Positions 45,593-59,710 of a stretch of DNA of 64,000 bases are shown one piece after another. Within the stretch, counting starts at the first letter, position 1; every line of letters begins with the position of its first letter. A program made the translations under genes and the position numbers. The stretch covers positions 203,119 through 267,118 of IMG/VR virus record IMGVR_UViG_3300030329_006583; one strand, 5' to 3'. Under the pieces are notes generated by a model. That model had not been told where the DNA came from. It was given only the letters and a program-made list of their open reading frames with translations, and did not search any database.

Positions 45593-45593
45593 T

Positions 45594-47162: not shown

Positions 47163-47687
47163 CTAAAGAGGAAGGTGATCGGTCTTTATGCCGGAATTAA
47201 TTAACAACTCCACCCCCGCTGTATCGCGATATTCATTTGCATAATACACCTCATTAATGCCGGCATTTATCATTGCTTTGGCACACATACGACACGGAGA
47301 CAAAGTAACATACATTTTTTTCTTTTTGTGCGTATTATAATCCATTTTTAGTAATGCATTAATTTCGGCATGAATCATTCCGGAATGACCGGGCTCAGTT
47401 GACTCTACCTCGTTTGGCCCGCCGGCATAATTCCCATTATACCCCACCGCTAAAACCTGAGTATTGTCACCGGAAACTACAATGGCACCCACTTGATTTC
47501 TAGGATCGTAAGAACGTCGACTGATGGAATTTGCAAATTCCATCCAAATTTCATCCCACGGAGGCCGGTGTTTAGTGCGCCGAGATGGCATTACTTTTTC
47601 TACCCCTTCCTTTAATTGCGCAGTTACCTCTGCCCTTAATTCCTCCGGAACGTATTGTTCTATTATTTCAAATATCTTTCCCAACAT
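47163..47687 (-). CDS. dCMP deaminase
   Basis: GYNG, HAEINA, TLSPCRMC. Confidence 0.9.
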   Translation of the reverse strand: MLGKIFEIIEQYVPEELRAEVTAQLKEGVEKVMPSRRTKHRPPWDEIWMEFANSISRRSYDPRNQVGAIVVSGDNTQVLAVGYNGNYAGGPNEVESTEPGHSGMIHAEINALLKMDYNTHKKKKMYVTLSPCRMCAKAMINAGINEVYYANEYRDTAGVELLINSGIKTDHLPL

Positions 47688-48243
47688 TATCTTCCTTTTG
47701 ATTTATAAAGGGGTAATGTTCCCAACACCTAGGTTCATAATATTCAGCACCACCCACTGTAATCTCATCCAATCCCTTCACTTTGTGGTGAGTATAATAA
47801 GCATCGCGCCCAGTGCGAGGGCACACAGCGGGACAAATTTCAATTTTGGTAGCCCAAGGCATCATATCCCTCACCTCCTCAAAAACTTTCCCAGCAGCTG
47901 ATAATTGTAAAGATGACACAACAACTGTCACCCCGGTTTGAAAAATCTTCAAAAGTGCGATAGCTGAGCCATCAATCATGAACGCTTCATCCACCCCTAC
48001 CACATCAGGTTTGTATTCGGTGACCGCATCCCAGATTTCCTTCCCGTTAGAAACCAACGTGGCAGGAAACGTAGTACCTGAATGTGTGCTTATCTCTTTT
48101 TCAGTGTATCTATCGTCCATCCTTGGTTTAAATGCCATTACGCGTAAATTTTGATATGTAAATCTCTCAAGTGACGCCAACATTCGGGTGGTTTTAGAAC
48201 CAAACATAGGCCCTGTAAAAATAATAAAACTAGGATCTCTCAA
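47668..48243 (-). CDS. tdk: Thymidine kinase
   Basis: GPMFGSKT, VDEAF, VGGAEYYEPRC. Confidence 0.9.
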   Translation of the reverse strand: MRDPSFIIFTGPMFGSKTTRMLASLERFTYQNLRVMAFKPRMDDRYTEKEISTHSGTTFPATLVSNGKEIWDAVTEYKPDVVGVDEAFMIDGSAIALLKIFQTGVTVVVSSLQLSAAGKVFEEVRDMMPWATKIEICPAVCPRTGRDAYYTHHKVKGLDEITVGGAEYYEPRCWEHYPFINQKEDNVGKDI

Positions 48244-49254
48244 TTAATTCTCCTCCAATCCCCACCACGCAAATGTTTTTTCCAAGCCGGCGGCCAAATT
48301 TGTCTGGGGTGTGTATCCCAATTTTTCTTGTGCCAACGATGTATCAGCCAGGGTCTTCATTACATCACCTGGGCGCCAAGGGGCATGTTTAATTTTAATA
48401 TCATTGAACTTATTTTTAAAAATCTCCAGAATTTCATTATTTGAACATGATTCACCATACCCTACATTAAACACATTACCGCATACGTCATCTTTTGTAG
48501 TCGCGGCCAAAATATTTGCATTGACCACATCATCAACAAAAACCATATCCCTCACTTGAGTACCGTCACCATCACTACGAAGGGGGAGATTATTTTTTGT
48601 AGCATGACACCACGCGCCAATTGCAGTAGAATAAGGGCTGTCGCCGTATTGGTGTGGCCCATAAACATTGAAATACCTCAAAGACACAATTTTCATCCCA
48701 TAAAGTTTATGAAACAACTCAGCAAAATATTCTCCGCACAACTTTTGTAACGCATAAGGTGATTGAGGATCTTTCTCCATTGTTTCCGGCGTAGGAAAAA
48801 TCTGGGCATCTCCATATACCGATGATGAACTTGAAAATATTACACGCCGAGTATTGCCAACTGACACCTGAAATAAGGCTATGGTTTTAAATAAATTTGT
48901 TTCTGTGGTGGCCACTGGATCATCCACGGAATGTTCCACCCGGGGAAGGGCCGCCATATGAAAAACATAATCGTATATTCCTGATTTTACCCTATTTAAC
49001 ACATTATCATGCGCAAAATCGCCGGTTATAACCAAAACTTGTGTGGGGTTGATTTCGTGTTTATCTTCATGCTCTTCCTCATAAAGATGTAATAAATCTG
49101 CATGGACTGTGCGAGGTTTAACGCTGTCCAAAAAATCTAAATATCCGTTGGACATATCATCAACTACGTCCACAGACCAACCTTTTTTATGCAGCCCAAG
49201 AACTAAGTTGCTGCCAATAAAACCACACCCACCTGTCACCAAACATTTAACCAT
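48244..49254 (-). CDS. NAD-dependent NDP-sugar epimerase/dehydratase (GalE/WbpP-like)
   Basis: TGGCGFIGS, SSSSVYG, YALQK, LRYFNVYGP. Confidence 0.9.
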   Translation of the reverse strand: MVKCLVTGGCGFIGSNLVLGLHKKGWSVDVVDDMSNGYLDFLDSVKPRTVHADLLHLYEEEHEDKHEINPTQVLVITGDFAHDNVLNRVKSGIYDYVFHMAALPRVEHSVDDPVATTETNLFKTIALFQVSVGNTRRVIFSSSSSVYGDAQIFPTPETMEKDPQSPYALQKLCGEYFAELFHKLYGMKIVSLRYFNVYGPHQYGDSPYSTAIGAWCHATKNNLPLRSDGDGTQVRDMVFVDDVVNANILAATTKDDVCGNVFNVGYGESCSNNEILEIFKNKFNDIKIKHAPWRPGDVMKTLADTSLAQEKLGYTPQTNLAAGLEKTFAWWGLEEN

Positions 49255-49264
49255 AATTTTCCCC

Positions 49265-50257
49265 TTATTCCAAAATATGATATCCCACAAAATTGGTGGA
49301 ATTTTGAACCGCAATCGAATCTTTTTCCAAGCCTAATTTTTTAAGCCGATGAGATACCAAAATTTTCCCCCAATCTTTCCAATATGAAACATCATCAATC
49401 TCAAGGCCATCAATTTCCTCGATTAACGCATTAATTTCTTCAACGTCATTCAATAAACGTAGATGTTTTTCAAATAACATCATTTCCTTAATCGGCATAT
49501 CCTTTGATAATGCCGGCATTTCACCGCGAGCCAATTGAAGCATTTTTGATTGACCTACTTCCTCGGAACGTAAAATATTCTCAACCATTTCAAAATGCCT
49601 TTCATAAATGTGAAGTGAATTACTGATATGTGTATATGTCCCTAACTCCACACCTAGTTCCAAAGCCAACATTTCTTGAAACATGGTAAATGCAGGAATA
49701 TCATAGGCAATCCCAAGTATCAAATCTGATGATCTCATATTAGTAATCATATGCAATTTTTCATCCCTGATCAAAAATTGCAAGGTGAGAGTACAAGGCA
49801 CATCCAGCTTTGCACTAACAGAATCCCATGGGCTCCGAATGTGAATGACGGCCCTCCTAGAATCTGGATCTTTCTTCAATTCATCAATAATGTATTCCCA
49901 CTGAATCAAGGAAAAATTAGCAATCCTGCCATGTGGTTTAAATATCCTGGCACCATATGCCGAATTAGCTGTCTTACCATCATCACTAATATTATTCCAA
50001 AATGACGAATAATTTGCGATCCACTCTGTTGAGTCATCCCCGGAAAGATACCACAATAACTCCGCAATCATATAATGCATTGAAAATTTACGTGGCCGAA
50101 CATAAGGAATTCTATTCCTTGGGTTTTTCAGCACAAACTTCACTGCCAATTTCTCTTTCACTTTTTGGCCACGGGGACTGGAAATATAATCAGGGGAATT
50201 GTAGACGTCATTTAACAAACTTAAATAACAATCGGTAAAATTATCAAAATTACGCAT
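49265..50257 (-). CDS. Thymidylate-synthase-fold dCMP-modifying enzyme (hydroxymethylase-like)
   Basis: ELLWY, DSRRAV, VPCT, MRSSDLILGIAYD (Asp at the specificity position), SLHIYE. Confidence 0.8.
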   Translation of the reverse strand: MRNFDNFTDCYLSLLNDVYNSPDYISSPRGQKVKEKLAVKFVLKNPRNRIPYVRPRKFSMHYMIAELLWYLSGDDSTEWIANYSSFWNNISDDGKTANSAYGARIFKPHGRIANFSLIQWEYIIDELKKDPDSRRAVIHIRSPWDSVSAKLDVPCTLTLQFLIRDEKLHMITNMRSSDLILGIAYDIPAFTMFQEMLALELGVELGTYTHISNSLHIYERHFEMVENILRSEEVGQSKMLQLARGEMPALSKDMPIKEMMLFEKHLRLLNDVEEINALIEEIDGLEIDDVSYWKDWGKILVSHRLKKLGLEKDSIAVQNSTNFVGYHILE

Positions 50258-51580
50258 TTAATTGTCCTCCTTCACTGATTTTTCAACAGATAAAAGTCTC
50301 ATTTTACGCAAAGCCGCAGTGGTTGTACGCTCATAACTACACCTTTTTTGAACGGCATTTCGCAAACCCCATTCATCATTAAATGTCACGGTACCAATTT
50401 CATCCTCTGAAGTATAACAGTTTTTTTGAGCATTGTCAATCAAATTATCCAAAACATTCACCACATCACTCAAATCCGGATTGGCAACATATGGATAGTT
50501 CACTTCATCTGCAATTAATTTATATTCATAATTGTCTACCCAAAGTGGTAAACACCCCAATTCAATGCATTCACGAGCCGCAGTGCCACCATAGCTATCG
50601 ACGTTATAAAGACCCACGGCAATATGTGATTTGCGTGCTACGTATCGATATTCATTTCTGGTAAATGTATCATCAATCAAATGAAGATAAGGTTGGCAAT
50701 ATTGTTGTAATTCTTTATTTGAAAATTTCTGTGAAGGATTGCCTGCAATTACCACAAAATCCTGCCTTTTTTCATAAAGTTGATTACACAATTCAAATAA
50801 AAATTTACCACAATTTGTATAATCAGAGCTCCTACCCATTCCACCCACACGATTAGGTACAAAAATCACAGTTTTATCAGCAGGTATTTCAAACCTAAGT
50901 TCATTGACATCAACATTTTTTGTGATTTCTTCCTTAGAATAACCATCATCCCATGGGGAAGATTTCTCTGCGATTTGTGTAACTAATTTATCCTTATGTT
51001 CTACAGCCAATGAATCCAAGAAAATATTCAATGCAGATTCACATTGCCAAAAATTATAGTCTGCTTTGTCAGCAGCCTCAATTTGCCCGCGCCATAATGA
51101 ACCCTCCAACGGAAATTTAGGTGCCGCAGGATTATCAATAAAATGAGAATGCACTGCAAAAAAGGGTTGATATCCCCCTTCCAGAAAAAACAAGGTTTTA
51201 AAATTCCTCAGCAACATGGGATCATTAATATACACATGAGAATAACGTAGTGAATTTTGGGTTTTATGCCCTTTTAAATTAAGCAAGATTGCCAGCGCTT
51301 CAAAATCAAAATCATAACGTGTGGCAAGAGCATTAGGAATGATTTTGTGCCTGAGATAATTAACCCTTGGGTTTATATTAATATCCGGATATAACTGTTC
51401 AGGCTGGGTTATGACCTGTTCACGCAACGGGCACATAATATCAATATGCAAATCTGGTACCAGATCTAACATTACCCTCACCCTTCCCATCACCATCTGC
51501 CAGCCGGAATCTGCCTCTAGAATAAATTTTCCATTAGAATCATAATTTGACAATTGGGTTTGAATCAATAGTTTTTTCAT
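50258..51580 (-). CDS. Putative GT-B glycosyltransferase
   Basis: VIFVPNR, DSYGGTAARECIELGCLP (resembles the GT4 ExFG..xxE motif); gene context. Confidence 0.6.
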   Translation of the reverse strand: MKKLLIQTQLSNYDSNGKFILEADSGWQMVMGRVRVMLDLVPDLHIDIMCPLREQVITQPEQLYPDININPRVNYLRHKIIPNALATRYDFDFEALAILLNLKGHKTQNSLRYSHVYINDPMLLRNFKTLFFLEGGYQPFFAVHSHFIDNPAAPKFPLEGSLWRGQIEAADKADYNFWQCESALNIFLDSLAVEHKDKLVTQIAEKSSPWDDGYSKEEITKNVDVNELRFEIPADKTVIFVPNRVGGMGRSSDYTNCGKFLFELCNQLYEKRQDFVVIAGNPSQKFSNKELQQYCQPYLHLIDDTFTRNEYRYVARKSHIAVGLYNVDSYGGTAARECIELGCLPLWVDNYEYKLIADEVNYPYVANPDLSDVVNVLDNLIDNAQKNCYTSEDEIGTVTFNDEWGLRNAVQKRCSYERTTTAALRKMRLLSVEKSVKEDN

Positions 51581-52107
51581 TTTTTACCTTTTAAAAATGC
51601 TGTAATTTCATCAATCTCTTGTTCTAAATCTTCACTATCAACATTCAAATAATAAATGTCGCATTGTGTCCATTTACCAAATTCAAAATAAAGCTTTGAT
51701 AATTTATTTAAATTTTCCTCTGTTAATAAATCGGGGCGATCTTCATCATATAAACCAGAATAATCAGATCTGAAACATACAATGATTTTGGTACCCAATG
51801 ATGCAAAATGTCGATCAGAATTTCTCACCGCTGATAAATCTGTTTCTCGATGAAAAAATTGAGAATATACCCACTCACAAGGATAGGCACGATCCAATAT
51901 CAAAGAATAGCCGGTTTGGCTTAGTAAATCCAACATACGTGGATCTGCATATCTCATTTCATTAATAAAGTTTTTTTCATTTCTAAATTTTGATTTTTCA
52001 TCACAAGCCTTAAAGGTTGGAATACCTAATCGGGAGGATAATTCATGCGCAATTTCTGTTTTTCCTGTTTTATCCGGACCACAAAAAATTATAAGTTGCT
52101 GTTCCAT
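51577..52107 (-). CDS. dNMP kinase (thymidylate-kinase-like)
   Basis: GPDKTGKT, ILDR. Confidence 0.8.
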   Translation of the reverse strand: MEQQLIIFCGPDKTGKTEIAHELSSRLGIPTFKACDEKSKFRNEKNFINEMRYADPRMLDLLSQTGYSLILDRAYPCEWVYSQFFHRETDLSAVRNSDRHFASLGTKIIVCFRSDYSGLYDEDRPDLLTEENLNKLSKLYFEFGKWTQCDIYYLNVDSEDLEQEIDEITAFLKGKK

Positions 52108-52155
52108 TTTAAAATCACCAATTAAAGATTAATAACCAGGTTTAAATTATTTAAA

Positions 52156-55100
52156 TTAAGTTAACAGTTGTTTAAATTTACCAAAATTAGTAGACATTCC
52201 AAATTCATTTTGATTGATCTCAGCAACACAAATTGAATAAGCCGGAACATCTGTTTTGCCATCCCAACCCCACATAAACATTTTTGAAACTTTCCCTGAT
52301 GATCCTGTAATCTCAAGCAAAAGATAGGGTCGTTTGTTTTTTGTCAATTTAGAATGTGCAGCCTTTACAACAAACCAATATAAATCTTTGCCGTGATATT
52401 CATCAATTGCTGCAATTTCTTTTTCAGCAAATTTTTGTTTAATTTGTTCCGGAATTAAAAGACTGGCGTCAAAACTACCAAGCAAAGAAGTACTCATCTC
52501 AGCCCTTTCCTTGGCACCCCATTCATCACACCTTTCTTCTTCCAGTATGGCCTGACGATAATTGTTAATCCCACGTTCAGGATCACTTTTTGTTCGCTTT
52601 CTTAAATCATTATAGTGATCAATCAAAACATGATGCATATGCTTATAACTGGAAAATTCTTTGTTATCTCCTACCACATCCATGGATTCAAAAGCGCCAA
52701 TTTTAATTAAATTTTCCAATGCGCGTTTATTAAATTTTGAATGCCTCCAAATTCCTTCTTCATCCCACAACATTTCCCTTATGTTTCGATAAGGTCTTTT
52801 TTCAACAATTTCATCAATTGCAGAAGATCCCACGCCTTTACAAGAAAGAAATGAAGGCATAAACTTCTTGCCGTCAAGGATAGTCCAACTATCTGTGGCA
52901 TAATTAACGTCAATAGGGATAATATCATATCCCAACGCCCTAACCTCTGAAAATGCTTTGGCACGCTTATCAGCATTTGATGACATGGATTCCAGGTATG
53001 CACAAAGCCATTCCTCTTCATAATACGTCATCAGCCATGCACAAAAATATGAATCCATTGCATAAGAAACAGCGTGACTCATATTAAAACCATACCCGGC
53101 AAAATAAAGAATCTTTTCGTAAAGATCACTAGCAACTGAATTTGGTACCCCGTTTTTAACGGCGCCTTCAACAAAACTGCTTTTTAATTCATTAGCCTTT
53201 TTAATTGCCGCTGCACCACCGGAGATGCTGCGTTTCATGATAGCCTTTCTGACTTTATCGCATTCATCCTTGGGAAAACCTGCGACTACATTAGCTAATT
53301 TCATTACCTGTTCTTGAAAAATAATCATCCCATACGTAGGCTCTAAAACCTCCTTAATCAACGGATGTTGGTAATCAATATTCTCAGGTTCCAGCTTGTT
53401 TTTAATGTATAATTTATGAACATTGGCCGCCAGAGGCCCTGGGCGATAAATAGAGGTAAGAGTAGCAATATCAATTAAATTACGAGGCTTTGCCTTCATA
53501 AATAGTCGCTGGGCACCCCTATTTGTTAATTGAAAGATTCCGCCCCACCTACCGGAATGATATACATACTCATACACCTGTGGGTCATCAAAATCTATCA
53601 CACTTGGTGCCATGTTTTCTTCGTACCATTTTCTTACATCTGCAAATGCCGGTTTATCTACACCGCAGTGCCTCTGCAAAATCAATTCAATGGCACGTTC
53701 TACAATGCGAAGTGTTTCCAAACCCAGGAGATCAAATTTAATCCAACCAAATTCTTCCAGGTGTTTAAAATTTGTACCTTCCACCCACGGCGTTTGGGTT
53801 TCACCTTTGGCCAAAATAAGAGGCATTCTTTGGGGAACATTCTCTGAAACAATAACCCCGCCTGCATGACGACCTAGCGCCTTGTTTTGCTTAAACAATA
53901 CTCCCATGGGATTAGCCACTTCCGGGTATTTATCAATGAATTTTTTAAATGATTCACTGTGTTTAATTGCATCTTCGTATTTTAACACAAAAAGATTCTT
54001 GTCTTCACCGTGTTTGGTAACAGCTTTACGAACATCCTGTTCCACCGTCCGGGTGGCTGCATTGGCTTCATCAAAAGGAATCCCATAAAATCTCGATATA
54101 TCTTTCACCAACGTCTTTAATTTAAATGTGTTATAATTGGAAATTGGAACAATGTTCTCACCCCCAAAATTATCTTTAAGCAAATCAATAAGCAAATCCC
54201 GATTGGAAATATCTGTGTCAATATCAGGATATTCTAAACGATACTTGCTCAAAAAACGTTCAAAAAGAAGGTTGTATTTAATAGGATCGACGTCGGTGAT
54301 ATAAAGAACATAATTAACCAGTGAACCCGCACCGGAACCGCGGCCTGGACCGATTAACATCCGATCTCGAGCAACATCCAAAATTGCTTTCATCGTTAAA
54401 AAGTAGGCACTAAATTTGCGTTCTTTAATAACCGCCAGTTCCATTTTTAACCGATCGATATATTCTGGCTCATCAGCTAACCCACGTTTTATGAGTCCCT
54501 CTTTACACGCCTCCAATAATGCTTTATCGGCAGTCAAACCCTCGGGAATAACATAAGAAGGCAATTTAGGACTTTGATCGGGGTGAATGTCCCCAATTTC
54601 TTCATACACAATATCATGAGTACGTTCAATTGCCCCATGAATTATGTTATCATCATAAAAATCATACTGTTTAGTTGTGTCTTGATAGGATTCCCAAACC
54701 TGATTGGCGTTTTTGGGATAAAGTTCACACTTTAAATCCTCTTTGGACTGAGGGAGTTTGGAAGGATCAAAATCACGATAATTAAGCCAGCCCAATTTTT
54801 TATAAAGTTCCCGCTCCTTCCAATGTTCAGGACGGGCATAATGAGAATCTGTGGTTACAACGAGCTGTTCCTGCAAACCGGCATTGTCTGCAAATTTCAT
54901 AATGGCCCTATTGACCAGGTGCTGTGCCGGTAATTGGTTGAATTGAAGCTCTAGTTTAACATTCCCACGACCCACTGAATGTTCCAGTTGTTCATAAGCA
55001 TTCCCTACCCCCAATAATACCTTTTCAAACAAATTCTTATCATCCAACAAACTGGCATGTAAATTATCAAATTCTACTTCCTGTAGGTGTTTAAAAACCT

Positions 55101-55758
55101 CATAACATAAGGGACCGCCCAAACATGCGGTAGAGATCATCAGGTGACCTCCCTTCGCCGCTTCTTTTAGCATCTTATAATCAACTCGAGGAAACCGATA
55201 AAACCCCTCCATGTACCCACGAGACACCAGGTGAAACAAGCGTTGAAGACCTTCCGACGTTTTTGGAAGCACCACCAGGTGGTGGCGGCGCTTAATTGGA
55301 TCATAAAACTTACCTGATTTAGTTTCCTCCTCGTTTTCAATTGTTAGGCTAGCTGCATCTGTAGAAATATCAAGGGTTTCATCATCACCATCTAATTTAG
55401 CAGTGAGGGGGGTAACTAATTTTTCCCGTTGGGCACGCAATACAGCTAGTGCATCAGTGTCACCTTTCTTTGCCGCTTTTTGAATTTCGTAATCAAGCTT
55501 CCATGCCTCAAGATCCGGATGAACATACATTTCACAACCAGGTACAAACTTAAAATTAGCACCGGCTTTATTCAATTTTTCCGCATGCAAATAAGCATGT
55601 GCAAAACTATTCATATGGCCATGGTTCGTCAAACACCACGCATCCATTCCATTTCCCCTCACAAAATCAATGTGTTCCTGAGGGTAATCCAACCCATCAA
55701 AAGTGGAAAATCCATCATGGGCATGCAGGCTTACAAAACGATTCGGTTCTCTACTCAT
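52156..55758 (-). CDS. dnaE: DNA polymerase III alpha subunit (family C)
   Basis: PHP HAHDGFS/TNHG/DSHY; GPGRGSGAGSLV; PDIDTD; KFDLLGL; YGFNMSHA. Confidence 0.95.
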   Translation of the reverse strand: MSREPNRFVSLHAHDGFSTFDGLDYPQEHIDFVRGNGMDAWCLTNHGHMNSFAHAYLHAEKLNKAGANFKFVPGCEMYVHPDLEAWKLDYEIQKAAKKGDTDALAVLRAQREKLVTPLTAKLDGDDETLDISTDAASLTIENEEETKSGKFYDPIKRRHHLVVLPKTSEGLQRLFHLVSRGYMEGFYRFPRVDYKMLKEAAKGGHLMISTACLGGPLCYEVFKHLQEVEFDNLHASLLDDKNLFEKVLLGVGNAYEQLEHSVGRGNVKLELQFNQLPAQHLVNRAIMKFADNAGLQEQLVVTTDSHYARPEHWKERELYKKLGWLNYRDFDPSKLPQSKEDLKCELYPKNANQVWESYQDTTKQYDFYDDNIIHGAIERTHDIVYEEIGDIHPDQSPKLPSYVIPEGLTADKALLEACKEGLIKRGLADEPEYIDRLKMELAVIKERKFSAYFLTMKAILDVARDRMLIGPGRGSGAGSLVNYVLYITDVDPIKYNLLFERFLSKYRLEYPDIDTDISNRDLLIDLLKDNFGGENIVPISNYNTFKLKTLVKDISRFYGIPFDEANAATRTVEQDVRKAVTKHGEDKNLFVLKYEDAIKHSESFKKFIDKYPEVANPMGVLFKQNKALGRHAGGVIVSENVPQRMPLILAKGETQTPWVEGTNFKHLEEFGWIKFDLLGLETLRIVERAIELILQRHCGVDKPAFADVRKWYEENMAPSVIDFDDPQVYEYVYHSGRWGGIFQLTNRGAQRLFMKAKPRNLIDIATLTSIYRPGPLAANVHKLYIKNKLEPENIDYQHPLIKEVLEPTYGMIIFQEQVMKLANVVAGFPKDECDKVRKAIMKRSISGGAAAIKKANELKSSFVEGAVKNGVPNSVASDLYEKILYFAGYGFNMSHAVSYAMDSYFCAWLMTYYEEEWLCAYLESMSSNADKRAKAFSEVRALGYDIIPIDVNYATDSWTILDGKKFMPSFLSCKGVGSSAIDEIVEKRPYRNIREMLWDEEGIWRHSKFNKRALENLIKIGAFESMDVVGDNKEFSSYKHMHHVLIDHYNDLRKRTKSDPERGINNYRQAILEEERCDEWGAKERAEMSTSLLGSFDASLLIPEQIKQKFAEKEIAAIDEYHGKDLYWFVVKAAHSKLTKNKRPYLLLEITGSSGKVSKMFMWGWDGKTDVPAYSICVAEINQNEFGMSTNFGKFKQLLT

Positions 55759-55788
55759 TCAAACTTACCTCTTCCGGAAAATAAAAAA

Positions 55789-55818
55789 GCACTCAATTGT
55801 ATTGTAACAATTGAGTGC
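55789..55818 (-). terminator. 12-bp perfect hairpin with T-tract; its loop is the -10 box of the dnaE promoter
   Basis: GCACTCAATTGT-TACAAT-ACAATTGAGTGC-TTTTTT. Confidence 0.7.
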
Positions 55819-55830
55819 CAAATTTACACG
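55801..55830 (-). promoter_or_regulatory. Promoter CGTGTAA-N17-TACAAT upstream of dnaE
   Basis: Recurrent motif with TG extended -10. Confidence 0.65.
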
Positions 55831-55847
55831 AATATTGATAAATTAAT

Positions 55848-56243: not shown

Positions 56244-56286
56244 CTATAATCTCCTGCTTGGTAATTTTAATTATCCAATTCATTAA

Positions 56287-56673
56287 TTAATAACCATTAT
56301 CAAGCCGAGAATGAATAATATTATCCTTGGTTTTATAGGCATTAAAAAGCTCCGAGGCATCCACACCCACCAATACTAACACAGATAGAAAATAATTGAA
56401 AGCATCCACCATTTCCTCAACAAACTCGTCCCTATTGAATTCACCGTTTTGTGTATCACGGTGGGGTTTCCAGTTCTTCAGGTGTTGCAATGCCTCAAAC
56501 ATCTCCTCCACCCCTCTTAATGCCATATCTCGCACATGTTGCTGTGACTTTTTATCACCAACATTAATAGGCCATTCGGGATACTCACCAGGCTTGATTT
56601 GTTGTAATCTCTTCATAAATGCCTGGCGTAGTTCAAACATTTCATGAAGTGAATCAGTTTGGTTCATCTTCAC
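56287..56673 (-). CDS. All-alpha NTP pyrophosphatase (dimeric dUTPase/dCTPase, MazG superfamily)
   Basis: EEMFEA..LKNWKPH...EEMVDAF. Confidence 0.8.
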   Translation of the reverse strand: MKMNQTDSLHEMFELRQAFMKRLQQIKPGEYPEWPINVGDKKSQQHVRDMALRGVEEMFEALQHLKNWKPHRDTQNGEFNRDEFVEEMVDAFNYFLSVLVLVGVDASELFNAYKTKDNIIHSRLDNGY

Positions 56674-56878
56674 CTATACCCTCCAACATTGCCTCAATAT
56701 TGTTTTCAAATTGAGATTTATATTCCTCGGCCAGATAAATGGTGTCATCAGCCACCGTTAACCTCGCCTGCCTAAAATGATCTACCACATCTGTTCCAGA
56801 AATGATTGCCATTTGCACCAATTTCGCAATTTGACCAATCACCTCATCGGAAAGTTTTAAATTTGTATTATCACTCAT
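56654..56878 (-). CDS. Small hypothetical protein
   Basis: GGAG RBS; LSDEVIGQIAKLVQ. Confidence 0.65.
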   Translation of the reverse strand: MSDNTNLKLSDEVIGQIAKLVQMAIISGTDVVDHFRQARLTVADDTIYLAEEYKSQFENNIEAMLEGIGEDEPN

Positions 56879-56886
56879 TTTTTCTC

Positions 56887-57690
56887 CTATATTTGAATGG
56901 CAGGACACCAGTGGGTAGTCCTACCGTCTGCAGTTTGCTCCCTAATTACTTCATTTCCATCAGGATCTGTTTTTTGATTATATACCAAAAATTTCCTAGC
57001 GTATTCACCTTCTGATCCATCAAAATTTTTATAAGTTTTAATGGTAGCCCCACCACTCTCAAAACTTTCTCGCATCACTAATTGAATAGAACGATTAAGT
57101 GAAATTAATTCCTGGTCTGACATATCAATTACTCGACGATAGGGGCTGATTTTTGACAACCAAAGAGAATCTGCCTTTATGTAATTTCCCACCCCTGCAA
57201 CCACAGATTGATCCATCAATGCCTTTGTAATTTCCCACTTATTCTTTTTCCGCAATCTACCAATGAACATTTCATTATCTACATCAGTGGCTAACATATC
57301 TGGGCCTAGTGAGGTTAATTTTTCAATCAAGTTAAATTTCCCTCTGACAAATTTAATTGTGCCAAAATTACGTTGATCATTAAAATATACCATACCATCA
57401 TTTAAATGAAAACGCAAACGAGGGTGTTTAGTGACGACTTCGCTCCATCCCCCAGTCATCCCAAGCGTACACCATATAGAATATTCGTCATCCAATAACC
57501 AATACATAAATTTTCCATGGCATCCCGCACCGACGACCCTGATTGGAAATCTAGGGGCAATTATTTCAATGCCACTTGGTGGTTTTTTTTGATAACGCCC
57601 ATCTAAAATTTCAACAGCTTTTAGCGTACGCCCAGATACACGTTCCGCCAGTTGTTGTGCAATCCTTCTAACCTCTGGACCTTCAGGCAC
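56887..57690 (-). CDS. mutM: Fpg/Nei DNA glycosylase with zincless finger
   Basis: MPEGPEV, HGK, LGMTG, LMDQSVVAGVGNY, GRTTHWCP without four Cys. Confidence 0.88.
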   Translation of the reverse strand: MPEGPEVRRIAQQLAERVSGRTLKAVEILDGRYQKKPPSGIEIIAPRFPIRVVGAGCHGKFMYWLLDDEYSIWCTLGMTGGWSEVVTKHPRLRFHLNDGMVYFNDQRNFGTIKFVRGKFNLIEKLTSLGPDMLATDVDNEMFIGRLRKKNKWEITKALMDQSVVAGVGNYIKADSLWLSKISPYRRVIDMSDQELISLNRSIQLVMRESFESGGATIKTYKNFDGSEGEYARKFLVYNQKTDPDGNEVIREQTADGRTTHWCPAIQI

Positions 57691-58123
57691 GACCAGCCTC
57701 CATCAACCAATTATGGTAATCATTTAAAGCATGATCAGTAGGTTGTACATGTTCCCAATCACCTTTGCAAAATATTCGCCATGCATCATCGGCATACTTG
57801 CCACACCCATAAAGATCGGAGGCTGTCTCCCAATCGCCTGTTAAAAAACCTTTTGAGAATTTTTTCAAAGTATTAATCCGACGATTGTACATACCTAAAG
57901 GCTTAAGAATTTCTCGCAATCCCAATTCATCAGCATCTAAAATTGCTTGTGCATTTGGGTATTTTTTAAAAAACTCATCAATCATAGGATCTACTTGTTT
58001 ACGTGAAGTTTGATTCAACAATAAACAACATACCAGGATCTTCCACTGATCAGGCCAGTAATCCTCTTGTAATAATGCATGCGGTGATCTCGGTGGTTGC
58101 CAGTGCATCACTACCTCCTTCAC
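57683..58123 (-). CDS. MBD4-like HhH mismatch DNA glycosylase
   Basis: LLQE...WKILVCCLLLNQT, LKPLG, LYGCGKYADDAWRIF, DHALNDYHNWL. Confidence 0.8.
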   Translation of the reverse strand: MKEVVMHWQPPRSPHALLQEDYWPDQWKILVCCLLLNQTSRKQVDPMIDEFFKKYPNAQAILDADELGLREILKPLGMYNRRINTLKKFSKGFLTGDWETASDLYGCGKYADDAWRIFCKGDWEHVQPTDHALNDYHNWLMEAGRA

Positions 58124-58154
58124 AATAATAAAAAGAATAAAAATGGTGTATAAA

Positions 58155-58979
58155 TTATCGGTCCTGAATTCCTACAATTTTAACCGGGGTGGCAATATAT
58201 TCATTCCACAAGCTGGTCCTTACGCTTCCATCGCAACTATCCAGTTCATAACATATATTGTTGAGATCTTTACCGGGATATTCTAGCCGATACATATTGC
58301 ATGCACGCCGACCATTATCTAGTGCCATTGATTTAATGTCACTGCGAAAACCTGCACGGACATTACCGATAAATGTCACTAACACCGTGGATTCAGGACG
58401 AAAAAATTCTCGTTCCATAACTGTAAAAGCAGAAATATCAAATTCAGGACCTGATTCCAGGGATTTCATTAATCTATCCAATCCTTCAGGGGAAGTATAG
58501 TGGGATAGGAACTTAAGGTTATACGTGGAACCGTAAAGCTGTGTTGTATATACATCATCAAGCATCACATAAGGTTCCATATCTCCGCGTGAATAAAAAA
58601 ATGCAAATCTTAATTCTCTAATATCTGGGAAATAGTGGCCGTATTCATTTTCAAATGCCCACAACCTATGATTCACAAAATCTTCAATGAAATCCAAAAC
58701 ATTCTTTTTTGTTAATAATTCCCACCTATCGACTTCATCGCTAAGTTGGTATCCAAAAAACTGAGATATAAGACCTAGAAAATTCTCAAAATCTTCTGCA
58801 CTGCAGGAAACAGGATGTTTACAACTTAATTTTCCACCCCGGGAATCAAAGCCTAATCCTTGAAGTTCCAGGAGATACAGCGCCATTTCTTCCCATTCAC
58901 CCAATGTATGAAAAGACGAAGCTGGTTTCATGTATCCCCTAACTTTTGTTGATTCTTTCATAGTACCAATAACTATCAT
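58155..58979 (-). CDS. Hypothetical protein
   Basis: 274-aa ORF. Confidence 0.7.
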   Translation of the reverse strand: MIVIGTMKESTKVRGYMKPASSFHTLGEWEEMALYLLELQGLGFDSRGGKLSCKHPVSCSAEDFENFLGLISQFFGYQLSDEVDRWELLTKKNVLDFIEDFVNHRLWAFENEYGHYFPDIRELRFAFFYSRGDMEPYVMLDDVYTTQLYGSTYNLKFLSHYTSPEGLDRLMKSLESGPEFDISAFTVMEREFFRPESTVLVTFIGNVRAGFRSDIKSMALDNGRRACNMYRLEYPGKDLNNICYELDSCDGSVRTSLWNEYIATPVKIVGIQDR

Positions 58980-59710
58980 TCATCAGTTAAAGATGACCTA
59001 AGTTCCCTATATGCACCTACCGTAATGGGGAATAAATTTTCCGCAATACCCAACACGGCAATTGCCACCTGTTGAATTTCCCACTGCGCGCCTTCATGAA
59101 TGCGAAGATCAACGAATTTAAGAATATTGTTCAGGTTTGCCGTCCCGTAGTATTCGGTATACATATTTTGTGGAAGGACACCGCGGGCTTGTTCACGACA
59201 AACACCGGACTCCAAAAGTCGATCCAGGAGTTTAAGTGAGTTAACATGGTGTTTTCGAACTAATTCACTAGCCTCCGTTTCAACCAAACTCGCCATCAAC
59301 GGATGATCGATCTTGATGCTGGGATTAATCAATTTGTTAACAGATGCCTGCCTGTTGGATTCGCTCTGTTTCCTAAAAGCTTTAGGCTCATAGAATTCTA
59401 TGTTAAAATCTGTGTACCTTCTGCTAATTTCATTATAGGACCATGTCCTATGGCGCATATGCTGTTTGGAAATAAACAGAGGCACCTTAAAACGAAAAGT
59501 AATAGAACAATGTTCTAAAGTGCTGGTATGTTTGTGTTTAATAAGGTAATTGATCAATCTTTTGTCTTTTTCGTCAATATCTTCTTTATGTTTACCAAAA
59601 GAAACACGAGCGCTATTGACCACGGAAAGATCGCTACCAAGGTGATCAACCAATTCCACAAATCCGATTCCATCATCGTATAATTCTGTCCGTTCTTTGG
59701 GAAGTGTCAT
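58976..59710 (-). CDS. thyX: Flavin-dependent thymidylate synthase
   Basis: SARVSF, HTSTLEH, RHRTWSYNEISRRY, AQWEI. Confidence 0.95.
   Translation of the reverse strand: MTLPKERTELYDDGIGFVELVDHLGSDLSVVNSARVSFGKHKEDIDEKDKRLINYLIKHKHTSTLEHCSITFRFKVPLFISKQHMRHRTWSYNEISRRYTDFNIEFYEPKAFRKQSESNRQASVNKLINPSIKIDHPLMASLVETEASELVRKHHVNSLKLLDRLLESGVCREQARGVLPQNMYTEYYGTANLNNILKFVDLRIHEGAQWEIQQVAIAVLGIAENLFPITVGAYRELRSSLTDE

What the first reader, a model, noticed from the sequence alone, without database searches (positions are those of the whole stretch)
47163..59710. Cytosine hypermodification pathway with its own sugar epimerase: possibly a new glycosylated base
Seen, in order after dnaE: dNMP kinase, GT-B-like protein, ThyA-fold enzyme, NDP-sugar epimerase, tdk, dCMP deaminase; upstream are an all-alpha dNTPase and thyX. 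Established: the ThyA specificity residue is Asn for dUMP and Asp for dCMP (T4 gp42); here it is Asp (RSSD...GIAYD), and ThyX can supply dTMP. Inference: hm/h-dCMP synthesis, dCTP removal, and glycosylation with an epimerised sugar (Gal/GalNAc-type) rather than glucose, replicated by a family C polymerase.
Basis: partly seen in the sequence, partly recalled or inferred. Interest (0 to 1): 0.72.

Follow-up and report, generated by a model that had tools for sequence, protein, structure and literature searches.

The report
Swappable hydroxymethylcytosine sugar-decoration cassette
An uncultured marine huge phage carries a complete T4-style gene set for replacing cytosine with 5-hydroxymethylcytosine, next to an uncharacterised glycosyltransferase and a sugar 4-epimerase that most likely decorate that base, in a slot where related phages carry other decorating enzymes.

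Summary
On the minus strand, tightly packed: thyX, two DNA glycosylases, a gp56-like NTP pyrophosphatase, dnaE, a P-loop kinase, a 440-aa GT-B protein, a ThyA homolog, an SDR 4-epimerase, tdk and dCMP deaminase.

The ThyA homolog has the dCMP hydroxymethylase signature (Cys146, Asp143, Asp169, Asp177, Ser167, Arg126). It lacks the D169N mark of 5-hydroxy-dCMP synthases and the Ala/Lys pair of CMP-preferring MilA.

The 440-aa protein folds as a GT4-like retaining glycosyltransferase (BshA Z 28; T4 alpha-GT Z 19). It has no Pfam match and no detectable homolog in cultured phages.

In 91 related loci the cassette is conserved. The slot beside the hydroxymethylase holds one of three things: this GT, a T4 beta-glucosyltransferase-like GT, or a carbamoyltransferase of the domain type shown experimentally to act on 5hmC. 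The occupant changes at least 8 times on the hydroxymethylase tree. That is strong comparative evidence that the window's GT decorates hmC.

The epimerase is GalE/WbpP-like, with Thr at the gatekeeper position. Some relatives add a UDP-galactopyranose mutase, which favours a Gal-type sugar. The sugar remains unproven.

Verdict: a new variant of a known kind of system.

The parts
58976..59710 (-). thyX, flavin-dependent thymidylate synthase. Supplies dTMP, so the ThyA-fold enzyme is free for another role.
   Evidence: PF02511 Thy1, E 5.3e-50, 170 bits against a cut-off of 24.8.
56287..56673 (-). All-alpha NTP pyrophosphatase (MazG/dUTPase_2-like). Candidate dCTPase, the counterpart of T4 gp56.
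   Evidence: phrog_12184 nucleotide pyrophosphohydrolase 1.1e-17 and phrog_173 4.6e-13. Weak PF08761 and PF01503 matches, both below their cut-offs. BLASTP to T4 gp56: the last 42 residues are 40% identical, pairwise E 2e-8, and both proteins end in DNGY.
55788..55819 (-). Terminator-like hairpin (13-bp stem followed by a T run) just upstream of dnaE. Possible boundary of a transcription unit.
   Evidence: Pattern scan only. Terminator-like sites in the region: 14 found, 9.8 expected.
52156..55758 (-). dnaE, family C replicative DNA polymerase alpha subunit.
   Evidence: PF07733 1.6e-55, PF17657 2e-38, PF02811 1e-20, PF14579 1e-9. About 29% identity to DnaE-like polymerases of cultured phages.
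51577..52107 (-). P-loop nucleoside/nucleotide kinase. Candidate dNMP kinase for hm-dCMP, the role of T4 gp1.
   Evidence: phrog_761 'thymidylate kinase' 2.4e-8. AAA_28 matched by 16 of 17 family members, all weakly. A family profile finds deoxyguanosine kinase 2jaq at E 2.8e-5 and SPbeta YorR at 0.003. A homolog was detected in 82 of the 91 related loci. Its stop overlaps the start of the GT gene by 4 nt.
50258..51580 (-). GT-I: 440-aa GT-B-fold, GT4-like (retaining-type) glycosyltransferase. Proposed 5hmC-DNA glycosyltransferase.
   Evidence: No match in Pfam, PHROGs or NCBIfam. AF2 model pLDDT 90.7, pTM 0.88. VIA-align: BshA Z 28, MshA 26.6, PglA 25.7, phage HY126 glycosyltransferase 21.3, T4 alpha-GT with DNA 19.4. 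At least 433 homologs, all metagenomic, many on contigs up to 351 kb. None found in cultured phages by tblastn. It occupies the same slot as BGT-like GTs or carbamoyltransferases in relatives.
49265..50257 (-). ThyA-fold enzyme, predicted dCMP 5-hydroxymethylase (long, MilA / phage G gp319-like form).
   Evidence: PF00303 6e-36. Best PDB match is MilA CMP hydroxymethylase, 3e-47, aligned over residues 3-304. In E. coli numbering it has E58, Y94, R126, R127, D143, C146, T147, R166, S167, D169, D177, H207 and Y209.
48244..49254 (-). SDR UDP-hexose 4-epimerase (GalE/WbpP/WbgU-like). Proposed supplier of UDP-Gal or UDP-GalNAc.
   Evidence: PF01370 9.5e-46. Best NCBIfam model is galE, 168 bits, below its cut-off of 262. 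PDB matches: TmGalE 6e-48, 6wjb, 6dnt, WbgU 9e-44, WbpP 1e-41. S124, Y149, K153 and N179 are kept, and Thr sits at the position of GalE Tyr299. Adjacent to the hydroxymethylase in 31/33 and 55/58 related loci.
47668..48243 (-). tdk, thymidine kinase.
   Evidence: PF00265 2.8e-32. phrog_592 4e-27.
47163..47687 (-). dCMP deaminase. Makes dUMP for ThyX and lowers the dCMP pool.
   Evidence: PF00383 3.3e-21. phrog_174 dCMP deaminase 2.8e-45.
56887..58123 (-). No role in the pathway has been shown.
   Evidence: PF06831 2.8e-17, PF01149 5.9e-17, PF21025 1.3e-9, PF00730 3.6e-11.

Best explanation
The window holds a T4-style pre-replicative pathway that replaces cytosine with 5-hydroxymethylcytosine (hmC), followed by a decoration step.

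Proposed steps:
1. The ThyA-fold enzyme converts dCMP to 5-hm-dCMP, using methylene-tetrahydrofolate and water.
2. The adjacent P-loop kinase, together with host NDP kinase, raises it to the triphosphate.
3. The gp56-like NTP pyrophosphatase and the dCMP deaminase deplete dCTP and dCMP.
4. ThyX and tdk supply dTMP.
5. The phage DnaE polymerase incorporates hm-dCTP.
6. After replication, the 440-aa GT4-like glycosyltransferase (GT-I) transfers a sugar from a UDP-sugar to the hydroxymethyl group. The linkage is probably alpha, because its structural relatives are retaining enzymes.
7. The donor is most likely UDP-galactose or UDP-GalNAc, made from the host's UDP-Glc or UDP-GlcNAc by the adjacent 4-epimerase.

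Shown from sequence, fold and comparative genomics: the gene set and its order, the active-site residues, the GT-B fold, and the conserved cassette with a swappable decorating slot.

Inferred: every enzyme activity, DNA as the acceptor, the identity and linkage of the sugar, and how completely cytosine is replaced.
For: (1) Hydroxymethylase signature.
- The window enzyme has D143, C146, D169, D177, S167 and R126.
- Controls in the same alignments behave as published: E. coli ThyA L143/D169/N177; SPO1 dUMP hydroxymethylase D/D/N; T4 gp42 D/D/D; RB69 5-hydroxy-dCMP synthase E/N/D. The criteria come from PMC13326640 and PMC5175136.
- T at position 147 matches the residue class that PMC8670742 found associated with modified contigs.

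(2) All 34 ThyA homologs extracted next to a GT-I homolog carry the same signature, although they fall into three sequence types: long MilA-like, short T4 gp42-like, and a third type.

(3) GT-I is a confident GT-B/GT4-like model. The same fold class includes two solved phage glycosyltransferases: T4 alpha-GT bound to DNA (Z 19.4) and the phage HY126 GT (Z 21.3).

(4) Slot logic, from 91 cassette loci.
- The position beside the kinase and hydroxymethylase holds GT-I, GT-II, or a 588-aa carbamoyltransferase with a 217-aa partner. GT-I and GT-II never occur together.
- GT-II is about 345 aa. Its profile's only PDB hit is T4 DNA beta-glucosyltransferase (E 4e-10), and the top Foldseek hit of its model is T4 BGT (6e-11).
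- A carbamoyltransferase found next to a TS homolog was shown experimentally to be a 5hmC carbamoyltransferase (PMC8670742).
- The occupant changes at least 8 times on a tree of 47 long-form hydroxymethylases. The window's enzyme is sister (SH-aLRT 98) to that of L040, which carries GT-II.

(5) Epimerase.
- Catalytic S/Y/K/N are kept, and Thr sits at the gatekeeper position in 82 of 87 aligned sequences (the cassette epimerases with the window's own, plus E. coli GalE as reference).
- One GT-II subgroup (about 22 loci) adds a UDP-galactopyranose mutase next to it, and that enzyme needs UDP-Gal.

(6) The NTPase aligns with the C-terminus of T4 gp56.

(7) The genes are packed like an operon.

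(8) Cultured Bacillus phage G has a 33%-identical long-form enzyme with D143/D177, close to a true T4 alpha-GT homolog, a kinase, a deaminase and DnaE.
Against: - There is no chemical evidence. The phage is uncultured, and short-read contigs say nothing about base modification.
- GT-I shows no detectable sequence similarity to T4 alpha-GT, to phage G gp313 or to GT-II. Its nearest structures act on small molecules or lipids (BshA, MshA, PimA, PglA).
- The epimerase remains next to the hydroxymethylase in the six carbamoyltransferase-class cassettes, which have no recognised GT. It is absent from two GT-I loci, L034 and L035. It is therefore not strictly coupled to GT-I.
- The genome has a separate glycan island with seven GT-family matches, three more SDR enzymes and its own UDP-galactopyranose mutase, any of which could use UDP-Gal.
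- The kinase and NTPase assignments rest on weak matches, below the curated cut-offs.
- The D143 and D169 rules are empirical correlations drawn from a modest number of tested enzymes.
Confidence: 0.55

Rival explanations
1. hmC is made and GT-I glycosylates it in DNA, but with an ordinary host sugar (glucose or GlcNAc). The base would then be of an already known type. In this reading the adjacent epimerase only balances UDP-sugar pools or feeds the phage's separate glycan island.
For: - T4 and the reconstituted metagenomic clusters use host UDP-Glc or HexNAc donors (PMC13326640; bioRxiv 2023.12.21.572611).
- The epimerase persists in cassettes with no recognised GT and is missing from two GT-I loci.
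- The genome's own UDP-galactopyranose mutase lies in the glycan island, not in the cassette.
- The best structural matches of GT-I, BshA and MshA, use UDP-GlcNAc.
Against: - The epimerase sits beside the hydroxymethylase in 86 of 91 loci, whatever else varies.
- In about 22 loci a UDP-galactopyranose mutase sits in the cassette between the hydroxymethylase and a BGT-like GT. That makes sense only if a Gal-derived donor is used on DNA there.
Confidence: 0.22
2. The GT-B protein and the epimerase do not act on DNA. They glycosylate something else (virion proteins, a host surface polymer or a small molecule) and merely sit within the nucleotide-metabolism module. The DNA would then carry plain hmC.
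For: - The nearest solved structures are small-molecule and lipid glycosyltransferases.
- The top viral structural matches include actinophage glycosyltransferases.
- There is no sequence similarity to known DNA glycosyltransferases.
- The phage clearly invests in other glycans, as the island at 94-120 kb shows.
Against: - GT-I was found only inside the hmC cassette. Every related locus with enough flank has a D177 ThyA homolog within a few kb.
- It is mutually exclusive, in one slot, with a T4 BGT homolog and with a carbamoyltransferase of the domain type that was shown to act on 5hmC in one enzyme.
- Its nearest relative by hydroxymethylase (L040) has the BGT-like enzyme in that slot.
Confidence: 0.13
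3. The ThyA homolog makes a different product: 5-methyl-dCMP (as proposed for XP12-type phages), 5-hydroxy-dCMP (RB69 type), hm-CMP for a nucleoside-antibiotic-like metabolite (MilA type), or ordinary dTMP.
For: - The best PDB match is MilA, a CMP hydroxymethylase.
- The 5-hydroxy-dCMP synthase of Rhizobium phage RL38JI also gives MilA as its best structural match, so the long form of the family is functionally mixed.
- The residue rules are correlative.
Against: - Asp177 argues against dUMP as the substrate.
- Asp143, rather than a hydrophobic residue, argues against simple methylation.
- Asp169, rather than Asn, argues against the flavin-type hydroxylase, while the RB69 control does show Asn.
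- Ser167 and Arg126, rather than MilA's Ala176 and Lys133, argue for a deoxyribo substrate.
- T4 gp42-like short enzymes replace it in the same slot in relatives.
- ThyX is present to make dTMP.
Confidence: 0.07

Closest known systems
T-even phage hmC glucosylation system: T4 gp42 dCMP hydroxymethylase, gp1 dNMP kinase, gp56 dCTPase, cd dCMP deaminase, alpha- and beta-glucosyltransferases
   Same: The same logic and the same set of roles. These are a D143/D169/D177 ThyA-fold enzyme, a nucleotide kinase, an all-alpha NTPase whose C-terminus aligns with gp56, a dCMP deaminase, tdk, and a GT-B-fold transferase beside the hydroxymethylase. In T4, b-gt is adjacent to gene 42. Relatives of this phage carry a true BGT homolog in the slot.
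   Different: - The replicase is DnaE (family C), not a family B polymerase.
- dTMP comes from ThyX, not from a ThyA-type td.
- The hydroxymethylase is the long MilA-like form. Its short T4 gp42-like counterparts in relatives are 28-30% identical to it.
- The GT has no sequence similarity to AGT and none to the BGT-like GT-II family that stands in for BGT here. It is closer in structure to bacterial GT4 enzymes.
- The cassette carries its own UDP-sugar 4-epimerase, which T4 lacks.
Glycosylated 5-hydroxycytosine systems of RB69, DLP3 and Rhizobium phage RL38JI (Lee et al., NAR 2026, PMC13326640)
   Same: A ThyA homolog, a dNMP kinase, phage-encoded sugar-nucleotide enzymes and GT-B-type DNA glycosyltransferases are clustered together. 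RL38JI uses galactose and a phage UDP-galactopyranose mutase, as one subgroup of this cassette appears to. The GT of phage HY126, a phage whose ThyA homolog is a flavin-dependent cytosine hydroxylase, is a structural match of GT-I (Z 21.3).
   Different: Those enzymes carry D169N and make 5-hydroxy-dCMP with a flavin. The window enzyme, and all 34 cassette enzymes checked, keep Asp169. The sugar would therefore hang on a hydroxymethyl group, not directly on C5-O.
Metagenomic GT-containing cytosine hypermodification clusters (Pyle et al., bioRxiv 2023.12.21.572611)
   Same: That survey reports GT-B-fold phage enzymes that resemble BshA, MshA and T4 BGT. They are often next to thymidylate-synthase homologs, with dCMP deaminase, and sometimes with epimerases nearby. 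This locus fits that general class.
   Different: The enzymes tested there belong to methyltransferase/TET (post-replicative) clusters, and their donors came from the E. coli metabolome. Whether the GT-I family was among their hits could not be checked. The constant cassette with three alternative decorating modules is not described in the sections I read.
5hmC carbamoyltransferase clusters (Yang et al., eLife 2021, PMC8670742)
   Same: That study found carbamoyltransferase domains co-occurring with TS homologs on modified-DNA contigs, where Asp177 predominates. It also found them co-occurring with a PRA-PH/MazG-like NTPase and dCMP deaminase domains. Six relatives of this cassette have exactly that arrangement.
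   Different: In the window the carbamoyltransferase is replaced by GT-I. The window's genome does encode a carbamoyltransferase, but in the distant glycan island.
MilA, CMP 5-hydroxymethylase of mildiomycin biosynthesis (PDB 5jnh, 5b6d)
   Same: The best solved-structure relative (3e-47), aligned over almost the full length including part of the C-terminal extension. Asp is present at the positions equivalent to 143 and 177.
   Different: MilA's ribose-preference residues, Ala176 and Lys133, are Ser and Arg here, as in enzymes that use dCMP or dUMP. The context is a phage replication module, not an antibiotic cluster.
Bacillus phage G cluster gp313-gp329
   Same: A cultured huge phage with a 33%-identical long-form D143/D177 enzyme (gp319), a kinase (gp315), a dCMP deaminase (gp317) and a DnaE-like polymerase (gp329), all within 12 kb.
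   Different: Its glycosyltransferase, gp313, is a genuine T4 alpha-GT homolog (E 3e-18), and no epimerase is annotated in the stretch. I found no paper on its DNA chemistry.

Membership tests
dCMP 5-hydroxymethylase (ThyA-fold; T4 gp42 / MilA type) | ThyA fold with the catalytic Cys146 and the conserved E58, Y94, R166, H207 and Y209. | tested here: met
   PF00303 at 124 bits against a cut-off of 24.3. All of these residues are present.
dCMP 5-hydroxymethylase (ThyA-fold; T4 gp42 / MilA type) | Asp instead of Asn at position 177, which gives cytosine specificity. | tested here: met
   GIAYD aligns to LPFNI of E. coli. T4 gp42 has D and SPO1 gp29 has N.
dCMP 5-hydroxymethylase (ThyA-fold; T4 gp42 / MilA type) | An acidic residue at position 143, which admits water and gives a hydroxymethyl rather than a methyl product. 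| tested here: met
   KLDVPC has D at position 143, as in T4, SPO1 and phage G. E. coli has L. The criterion comes from PMC13326640.
dCMP 5-hydroxymethylase (ThyA-fold; T4 gp42 / MilA type) | Formation of 5hm-dCMP from dCMP and methylene-THF. | not testable with these tools
   This needs an enzyme assay, or in vivo LC-MS.
5-hydroxy-dCMP synthase (RB69 gp48 / DLP3 gp80 type) | Asn at position 169 (D169N). | tested here: not met
   The window has RSSD, so D169. The RB69 gp48 control shows RSQN in the same alignment. All 34 cassette enzymes checked have D169.
CMP-preferring hydroxymethylase (MilA/BcmA) | Ala at TS position 167 and Lys at TS position 126 (MilA A176 and K133). | tested here: not met
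   The window has Ser (MRSSD) and Arg (DSRR), where MilA has MRAND and DSKR. The criterion comes from PMC5175136.
GT-B fold, GT4-like retaining glycosyltransferases | Two Rossmann-like domains that superpose on GT4 enzymes over most of their length. | tested here: met
   pLDDT 90.7. BshA Z 28.0 with 351 residues aligned, MshA 26.6, PimA 25.9, PglA 25.8.
GT-B fold, GT4-like retaining glycosyltransferases | A match to a curated GT1/GT4 sequence model. | tested here: not met
   No family in Pfam, PHROGs or NCBIfam at E 0.01 or below. The family's invariant residues include G246-G247-x-G249 and D328-x-Y-G-G-T-x-x-R-E337 in the C-terminal half. These resemble donor-binding motifs, but I did not map them onto the structure.
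T4 alpha-glucosyltransferase family (AGT) | Sequence homology to AGT. | tested here: not met
   hhalign of the GT-I profile against T4 a-gt gives probability 0.4%, and against the AGT homolog phage G gp313 0.8%. The fold is shared (1y6f, Z 19.4).
T4 beta-glucosyltransferase family (BGT) | Sequence homology to BGT. | tested here: not met
   GT-I against the BGT-like GT-II profile gives probability 0.1%. By contrast GT-II of the relatives does match BGT: E 4e-10 and top Foldseek hit.
DNA (hmC) glycosyltransferase, in the functional sense | Transfers a sugar to the 5-hydroxymethyl group of cytosine in DNA. | not testable with these tools
   There is only contextual evidence, from slot exchange with BGT-like and carbamoyltransferase genes. 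The attempt to model the protein with DNA was not run by the tool.
UDP-hexose 4-epimerase (GalE / WbpP / WbgU, extended SDR) | GxxGxxG NAD-binding site and the catalytic Ser124, Tyr149 and Lys153 (E. coli GalE numbering). | tested here: met
   TGGCGFIGS, SSSSSVYG and SPYALQK are present. The S/Y/K/N/T pattern is kept in 82 of 87 aligned sequences, the cassette epimerases plus the E. coli GalE reference.
UDP-hexose 4-epimerase (GalE / WbpP / WbgU, extended SDR) | Reaches the curated equivalog score for GalE. | tested here: not met
   TIGR01179 galE is the best model, but at 168.3 bits against a cut-off of 262.3. It is filed as GalE-like, with substrate unresolved.
UDP-hexose 4-epimerase (GalE / WbpP / WbgU, extended SDR) | Gatekeeper residue: Tyr299 in E. 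coli GalE (non-acetylated substrates only), and a small residue in enzymes that accept UDP-HexNAc. | tested here: inconclusive
   Thr aligns with Tyr299 of E. coli GalE and with Ser of TmGalE, 6wjb, 6dnt and WbgU. That permits acetylated or non-acetylated substrates. Reading the residue as a specificity rule rests on my own knowledge of the literature.
T4 gp56-type dCTPase / all-alpha NTP pyrophosphatase | Homology to gp56 or the dUTPase_2/MazG superfamily. | tested here: inconclusive
   The C-terminal 42 residues are 40% identical to T4 gp56 (pairwise E 2e-8). phrog_12184 gives 1e-17. PF08761 reaches 20.8 bits against a cut-off of 22.9, and PF01503 17.5 against 21.3. Substrate unknown.
dNMP kinase (role of T4 gp1) | P-loop nucleotide kinase that phosphorylates hm-dCMP. 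| tested here: inconclusive
   The family's invariant residues include G10-x-D12-x-x-G15-K16, a P-loop-like motif, and D72-R73. The family profile finds deoxyguanosine kinase at 2.8e-5. Pfam matches are only weak. A direct comparison with T4 gp1 was not made.
ThyX flavin-dependent thymidylate synthase | Match to the Thy1 family above its cut-off. | tested here: met
   170.3 bits against a cut-off of 24.8.

The most novel reading that the evidence does not exclude
A widespread lineage of marine and freshwater huge phages with DnaE replicases treats hmC as a chemical handle. These phages exchange the decorating module (a GT4-like retaining GT, a BGT-like inverting GT with or without UDP-galactofuranose supply, or a carbamoyltransferase) within an otherwise constant cassette. 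In this particular phage the product would be alpha-galactosyl- or alpha-GalNAc-hydroxymethylcytosine, made by a glycosyltransferase family unrelated in sequence to any known DNA glycosyltransferase. As far as I could find, that base has not been described.
Probability: 0.35. Interest if true: 0.75.

Novelty: new variant of a known kind. Interest (0 to 1): 0.58.

Why it matters
Hypermodified bases decide whether a phage survives restriction enzymes, CRISPR nucleases and other DNA-targeting defences. They have also supplied tools such as T4 BGT for 5hmC mapping.

This locus would add three things:
- a large, uncharacterised GT-B family (at least 433 members, no Pfam model) as a candidate DNA glycosyltransferase;
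- a phage-encoded 4-epimerase that may widen the sugar repertoire on hmC to galactose or GalNAc;
- a natural 'plug-in' slot in which three chemically different hmC decorations replace one another repeatedly among close relatives.

The slot gives a ready-made comparative system for asking why phages diversify the same base. It also points to abundant modified DNA in marine huge phages. Such DNA can bias sequencing and the recovery of these phages from viromes.

Tried and rejected
- Megablast of the cassette against 50,697 phage records found no match. tblastn of GT-I against the same records found none either. There is therefore no cultured close relative to lean on.
- Profile comparisons of GT-I with T4 alpha-GT, phage G gp313 and GT-II showed no similarity.
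- Complex prediction of GT-I with a 24-bp duplex was counted by the tool but not folded. It is no evidence either way.
- Isoelectric points of GT-I and GT-II against T4 AGT and BGT were uninformative, since T4 AGT is itself acidic.
- The sigma-70 promoter scan was not above the shuffled expectation (51 found, 45.5 expected), so no promoter is claimed.
- The 274-aa protein between thyX and the glycosylases matched nothing in Pfam, PHROGs, NCBIfam or the ESM Atlas.
- Read laying on Logan contigs only showed that the stretch is assembled identically in two runs. Contigs carry no information on modification.
- Literature searches for galactosylated hmC in phage DNA and for the DNA chemistry of phage G found nothing relevant.
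- I considered that the SDR might act on the nucleotide itself, for example by oxidising the hydroxymethyl group. I rejected this because the enzyme keeps the GalE catalytic set and the R-x-G-D stretch, which aligns with REGD of E. coli GalE and with the same stretch in GalE-type epimerases of the PDB. From my own knowledge, that stretch is part of the UDP-binding region of GalE.
- Counting caveat. The 91 loci come from two searches. Five contigs were hit by both, and several loci are near-identical, so the counts are loci, not independent lineages. The second search was seeded with the long-form hydroxymethylase only.

Full report
**What the window is**

The window is the last 64 kb of a 267,118-bp IMG/VR virus record, estimated 78% complete. 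The DNA comes from marine metagenomes. Nearly all genes lie on the minus strand. No cultured phage is similar at the DNA level.

**The observation**

Read in the direction of transcription:
- thyX (59710-58976)
- a 274-aa unknown
- an HhH-GPD glycosylase and an Fpg/Nei glycosylase (58123-56887)
- an all-alpha NTP pyrophosphatase (56673-56287)
- a 131-aa ORF
- a terminator-like hairpin (55819-55788)
- dnaE (55758-52156)
- a P-loop kinase (52107-51577)
- a 440-aa protein with no family match (51580-50258)
- a ThyA homolog (50257-49265)
- an SDR epimerase, most likely starting at the ATG at 49254
- tdk (48243-47668)
- dCMP deaminase (47687-47163)

From the kinase onward the genes abut or overlap. 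The stretch is assembled without a single difference in the contigs of two sequencing runs, which may include the source sample.

**The ThyA-fold enzyme**

Its best solved relative is MilA, a CMP 5-hydroxymethylase (3e-47, aligned over residues 3-304). Ordinary thymidylate synthases score 1e-26 or worse, and T4 gp42 scores 7.5e-15.

I applied published residue criteria, in E. coli numbering:
- Position 177: Asn for uracil, Asp for cytosine.
- Position 143: hydrophobic for methyl, acidic for hydroxymethyl.
- Position 169: Asp for folate chemistry, Asn for the flavin-dependent 5-hydroxy-dCMP synthases (PMC13326640).
- MilA Ala176/Lys133 for CMP, against Ser/Arg for deoxynucleotides (PMC5175136).

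The window enzyme reads D143, C146, T147, S167, D169, D177 and R126.

The controls in my own alignments behave as published:

| Enzyme | 143 | 169 | 177 |
|---|---|---|---|
| E. coli ThyA | L | D | N |
| SPO1 dUMP hydroxymethylase | D | D | N |
| T4 gp42 | D | D | D |
| RB69 gp48 (5-hydroxy-dCMP synthase) | E | N | D |

The enzyme is therefore predicted to make 5-hydroxymethyl-dCMP. It should not make dTMP, 5-methyl-dCMP, 5-hydroxy-dCMP or hm-CMP. This is inference from residues, not an assay.

**The rest of the nucleotide pathway**

- ThyX (170 bits), tdk and dCMP deaminase are clear family members.
- The 128-aa NTPase matches phage NTP-pyrophosphohydrolase families (1e-17). Its last 42 residues are 40% identical to the C-terminus of T4 gp56 dCTPase, and both proteins end in DNGY (pairwise E 2e-8). 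The Pfam matches are below their cut-offs.
- The P-loop protein is only weakly assignable. A profile of 17 family members finds deoxyguanosine kinase at 2.8e-5. It is nevertheless conserved in the cassette.

Together these cover the roles of T4 gp42, gp1, gp56, cd, td and tk.

**The 440-aa protein (GT-I)**

It matches nothing in Pfam, PHROGs or NCBIfam. It has at least 433 homologs, all from metagenomes and many on contigs of 100-350 kb. No homolog was detected in cultured phages.

A model built from 34 family members is confident (pLDDT 90.7) and is a GT-B fold. Its structural matches, by Z score:
- BshA, 28
- MshA, 26.6
- PimA and PglA, about 26
- phage HY126 glycosyltransferase, 21.3
- T4 alpha-glucosyltransferase bound to DNA, 19.4

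The nearest relatives are retaining GT4 enzymes. Profile comparisons with T4 alpha-GT, with the phage G AGT homolog and with the BGT-like family described below find no sequence similarity.

**Comparative genomics, the main new evidence**

*Search from GT-I.* Searching IMG/VR, ENA and Logan with GT-I gave 33 loci. Each with enough flank shows DnaE, kinase, GT-I, an epimerase (31 of 33), a ThyA homolog, tdk, dCMP deaminase and a superoxide dismutase. The ThyA homologs fall into three sequence types: long as here, short T4 gp42-like, and a third type. All 34 extracted carry the same hydroxymethylase signature.

*Reverse search from the hydroxymethylase.* Searching with the long-form hydroxymethylase gave 58 cassette loci:
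- 55 have the epimerase beside the hydroxymethylase.
- Only 8 have GT-I.
- About 41 have a different protein of about 345 aa in the slot (GT-II).

*GT-II is T4 BGT-like.* Its profile has a single hit in the PDB, T4 DNA beta-glucosyltransferase (E 4e-10). Its AF2 model (pLDDT 92.9) has T4 BGT as the top Foldseek hit (6e-11).

*The third class.* Six loci have neither GT. They carry instead a 588-aa carbamoyltransferase with a 217-aa partner. Yang et al. found carbamoyltransferase genes next to TS homologs on modified-DNA contigs, together with PRA-PH-type NTPase and dCMP deaminase domains. They purified one such enzyme and showed it to be a 5hmC carbamoyltransferase (PMC8670742).

*Pattern.*
- GT-I and GT-II never co-occur in the 91 loci.
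- On a tree of 47 long-form hydroxymethylases the occupant of the slot changes at least 8 times. Shuffled labels need 14.6 changes on average, and none of 200 shuffles needs as few as 8.
- The window's enzyme is sister, with SH-aLRT 98, to that of L040, which carries GT-II.

A slot that alternates between a T4 BGT homolog, a carbamoyltransferase of the 5hmC-modifying kind and GT-I is best explained if GT-I also decorates hmC. This is still contextual evidence.

**The epimerase and the sugar**

The enzyme is an extended SDR. Its best models and structures are UDP-hexose 4-epimerases: galE is the best NCBIfam model but falls below its cut-off, and the PDB matches are TmGalE, 6wjb, 6dnt, WbgU and WbpP.

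The catalytic Ser, Tyr and Lys are present. The position of E. coli GalE Tyr299 is Thr, aligned with Ser of the other structures. The same pattern holds in 82 of the 87 aligned sequences: the cassette epimerases, the window's own, and E. coli GalE as reference. From my own knowledge, a small residue there goes with enzymes that accept N-acetylated substrates. Several of the top structures are UDP-GlcNAc/GalNAc 4-epimerases. I did not verify that from the entries' titles.

Independent support for a galactose-type donor comes from about 22 GT-II loci. There a UDP-galactopyranose mutase (PF03275, 1e-76) sits in the cassette beside the hydroxymethylase. The same pairing was proposed for Rhizobium phage RL38JI.

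Evidence against a simple epimerase-to-GT-I coupling:
- The epimerase is also present in the carbamoyltransferase-class cassettes.
- Two GT-I loci lack it.
- The genome has a separate glycan island that could use UDP-Gal.

The sugar is therefore the weakest link.

**Comparison with what is known**

- The logic is that of T-even phages.
- The clustering with sugar-nucleotide enzymes resembles the RB69, DLP3 and RL38JI 5-hydroxycytosine systems.
- GT-B enzymes next to thymidylate-synthase homologs, with deaminases and sometimes epimerases, were noted in a metagenomic survey (bioRxiv 2023.12.21.572611).
- Cultured Bacillus phage G has a similar module with a true AGT homolog.

What differs here:
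- the GT family, which is unrelated in sequence to AGT or BGT and is uncharacterised;
- the constant 4-epimerase;
- the DnaE/ThyX background;
- the three-way swappable slot.

I found no report of galactosyl- or GalNAc-hmC in phage DNA. I file the finding as a new variant of a known kind.

**Confidence**

| Claim | Confidence |
|---|---|
| The phage makes hm-dCMP and incorporates hmC | about 0.85 |
| GT-I decorates hmC in DNA | about 0.65-0.7 |
| The transferred sugar is the epimerised one (Gal or GalNAc) | about 0.45 |
| The whole statement together | 0.55 |

Noticed in passing
G000:C1:94000-120000 (outside the window; loci L120 and L121): A glycan-biosynthesis island of about 25 kb. It encodes UDP-glucose dehydrogenase, a PseB-like dehydratase, a DegT aminotransferase, a formyltransferase, an RmlD-like reductase and a UDP-galactopyranose mutase (52% identical to the one in relatives' cassettes). 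It also encodes a carbamoyltransferase, a PfkB kinase, and GT9-like, GT1 and GT2 transferases. It looks like O-antigen or capsule-type sugar chemistry. Its target (virion, host surface, or extension of a DNA glycan) is unknown.
   Followed up: partly
window 61232-63992, 14725-16194, 22912-24807, 27696-29306, 44894-45661: The phage encodes isocitrate lyase and malate synthase (a complete glyoxylate shunt) and an ATP-dependent PEP carboxykinase. It also encodes DnaK, a GroEL-type chaperonin and a protein with an Fe/Mn superoxide dismutase C-terminal domain. Glyoxylate shunt plus PEPCK is a route from acetyl units to sugar phosphates, which could feed sugar-nucleotide demand. That link is speculation.
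   Followed up: no
window 56887-58123: An Fpg/Nei-type and an HhH-GPD-type DNA glycosylase gene sit between thyX and the NTPase, inside the nucleotide module. Homologs are also near the cassette in the relative L037. Whether they repair phage DNA or act on unmodified (host) DNA is unknown.
   Followed up: no
L040:7951-8985, L042:12168-13220, L057:5253-6278, L074:8432-9487 and about 37 further loci: A family of about 345-aa T4 beta-glucosyltransferase homologs (GT-II) in huge-phage contigs. Its subgroups are accompanied by a UDP-galactopyranose mutase (for example L042:11017-12129), or by a second SDR with a 260-aa protein (L057:6286-8061). This suggests several different sugars on hmC within one phage lineage.
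   Followed up: partly
L049, L055, L063, L064, L080, L091 (for example L063:3843-10004): These are cassettes with a carbamoyltransferase, a 217-aa unknown protein and (in four) an ATP-grasp protein, and with no recognisable GT. They still keep the 4-epimerase beside the hydroxymethylase, and some also have a second SDR. Why a sugar epimerase is kept there is unexplained. The 217-aa protein might be an unrecognised transferase, or the carbamoyl group might go onto a sugar.
   Followed up: partly
L002:12331-13101, L016, L028, L034 compared with window 49265-50257: Three ThyA-fold sequence types occupy the same position of the cassette in different relatives. The short T4 gp42-like type is only about 30% identical to the window's long form. 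All carry the identical active-site signature, so the hydroxymethylase itself has been exchanged as well.
   Followed up: partly
L008 (Bacillus phage G, 227463-240422): Phage G encodes a D143/D177 long-form ThyA homolog (gp319), a full-length T4 alpha-GT homolog (gp313), a kinase, a dCMP deaminase and a DnaE-like polymerase within 12 kb. It is predicted to carry glucosylated hmC. I found no publication on its DNA chemistry in the library searched.
   Followed up: partly
window 48244-49254: The epimerase has about 20 extra residues between the NAD-binding glycine motif and the H-x-A-A motif, compared with E. coli GalE. The spacing is 91 residues against 72 in E. coli GalE, and 66-67 in the epimerases of L002 and L057. 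The insert is shared with L009, L040 and L042.
   Followed up: no
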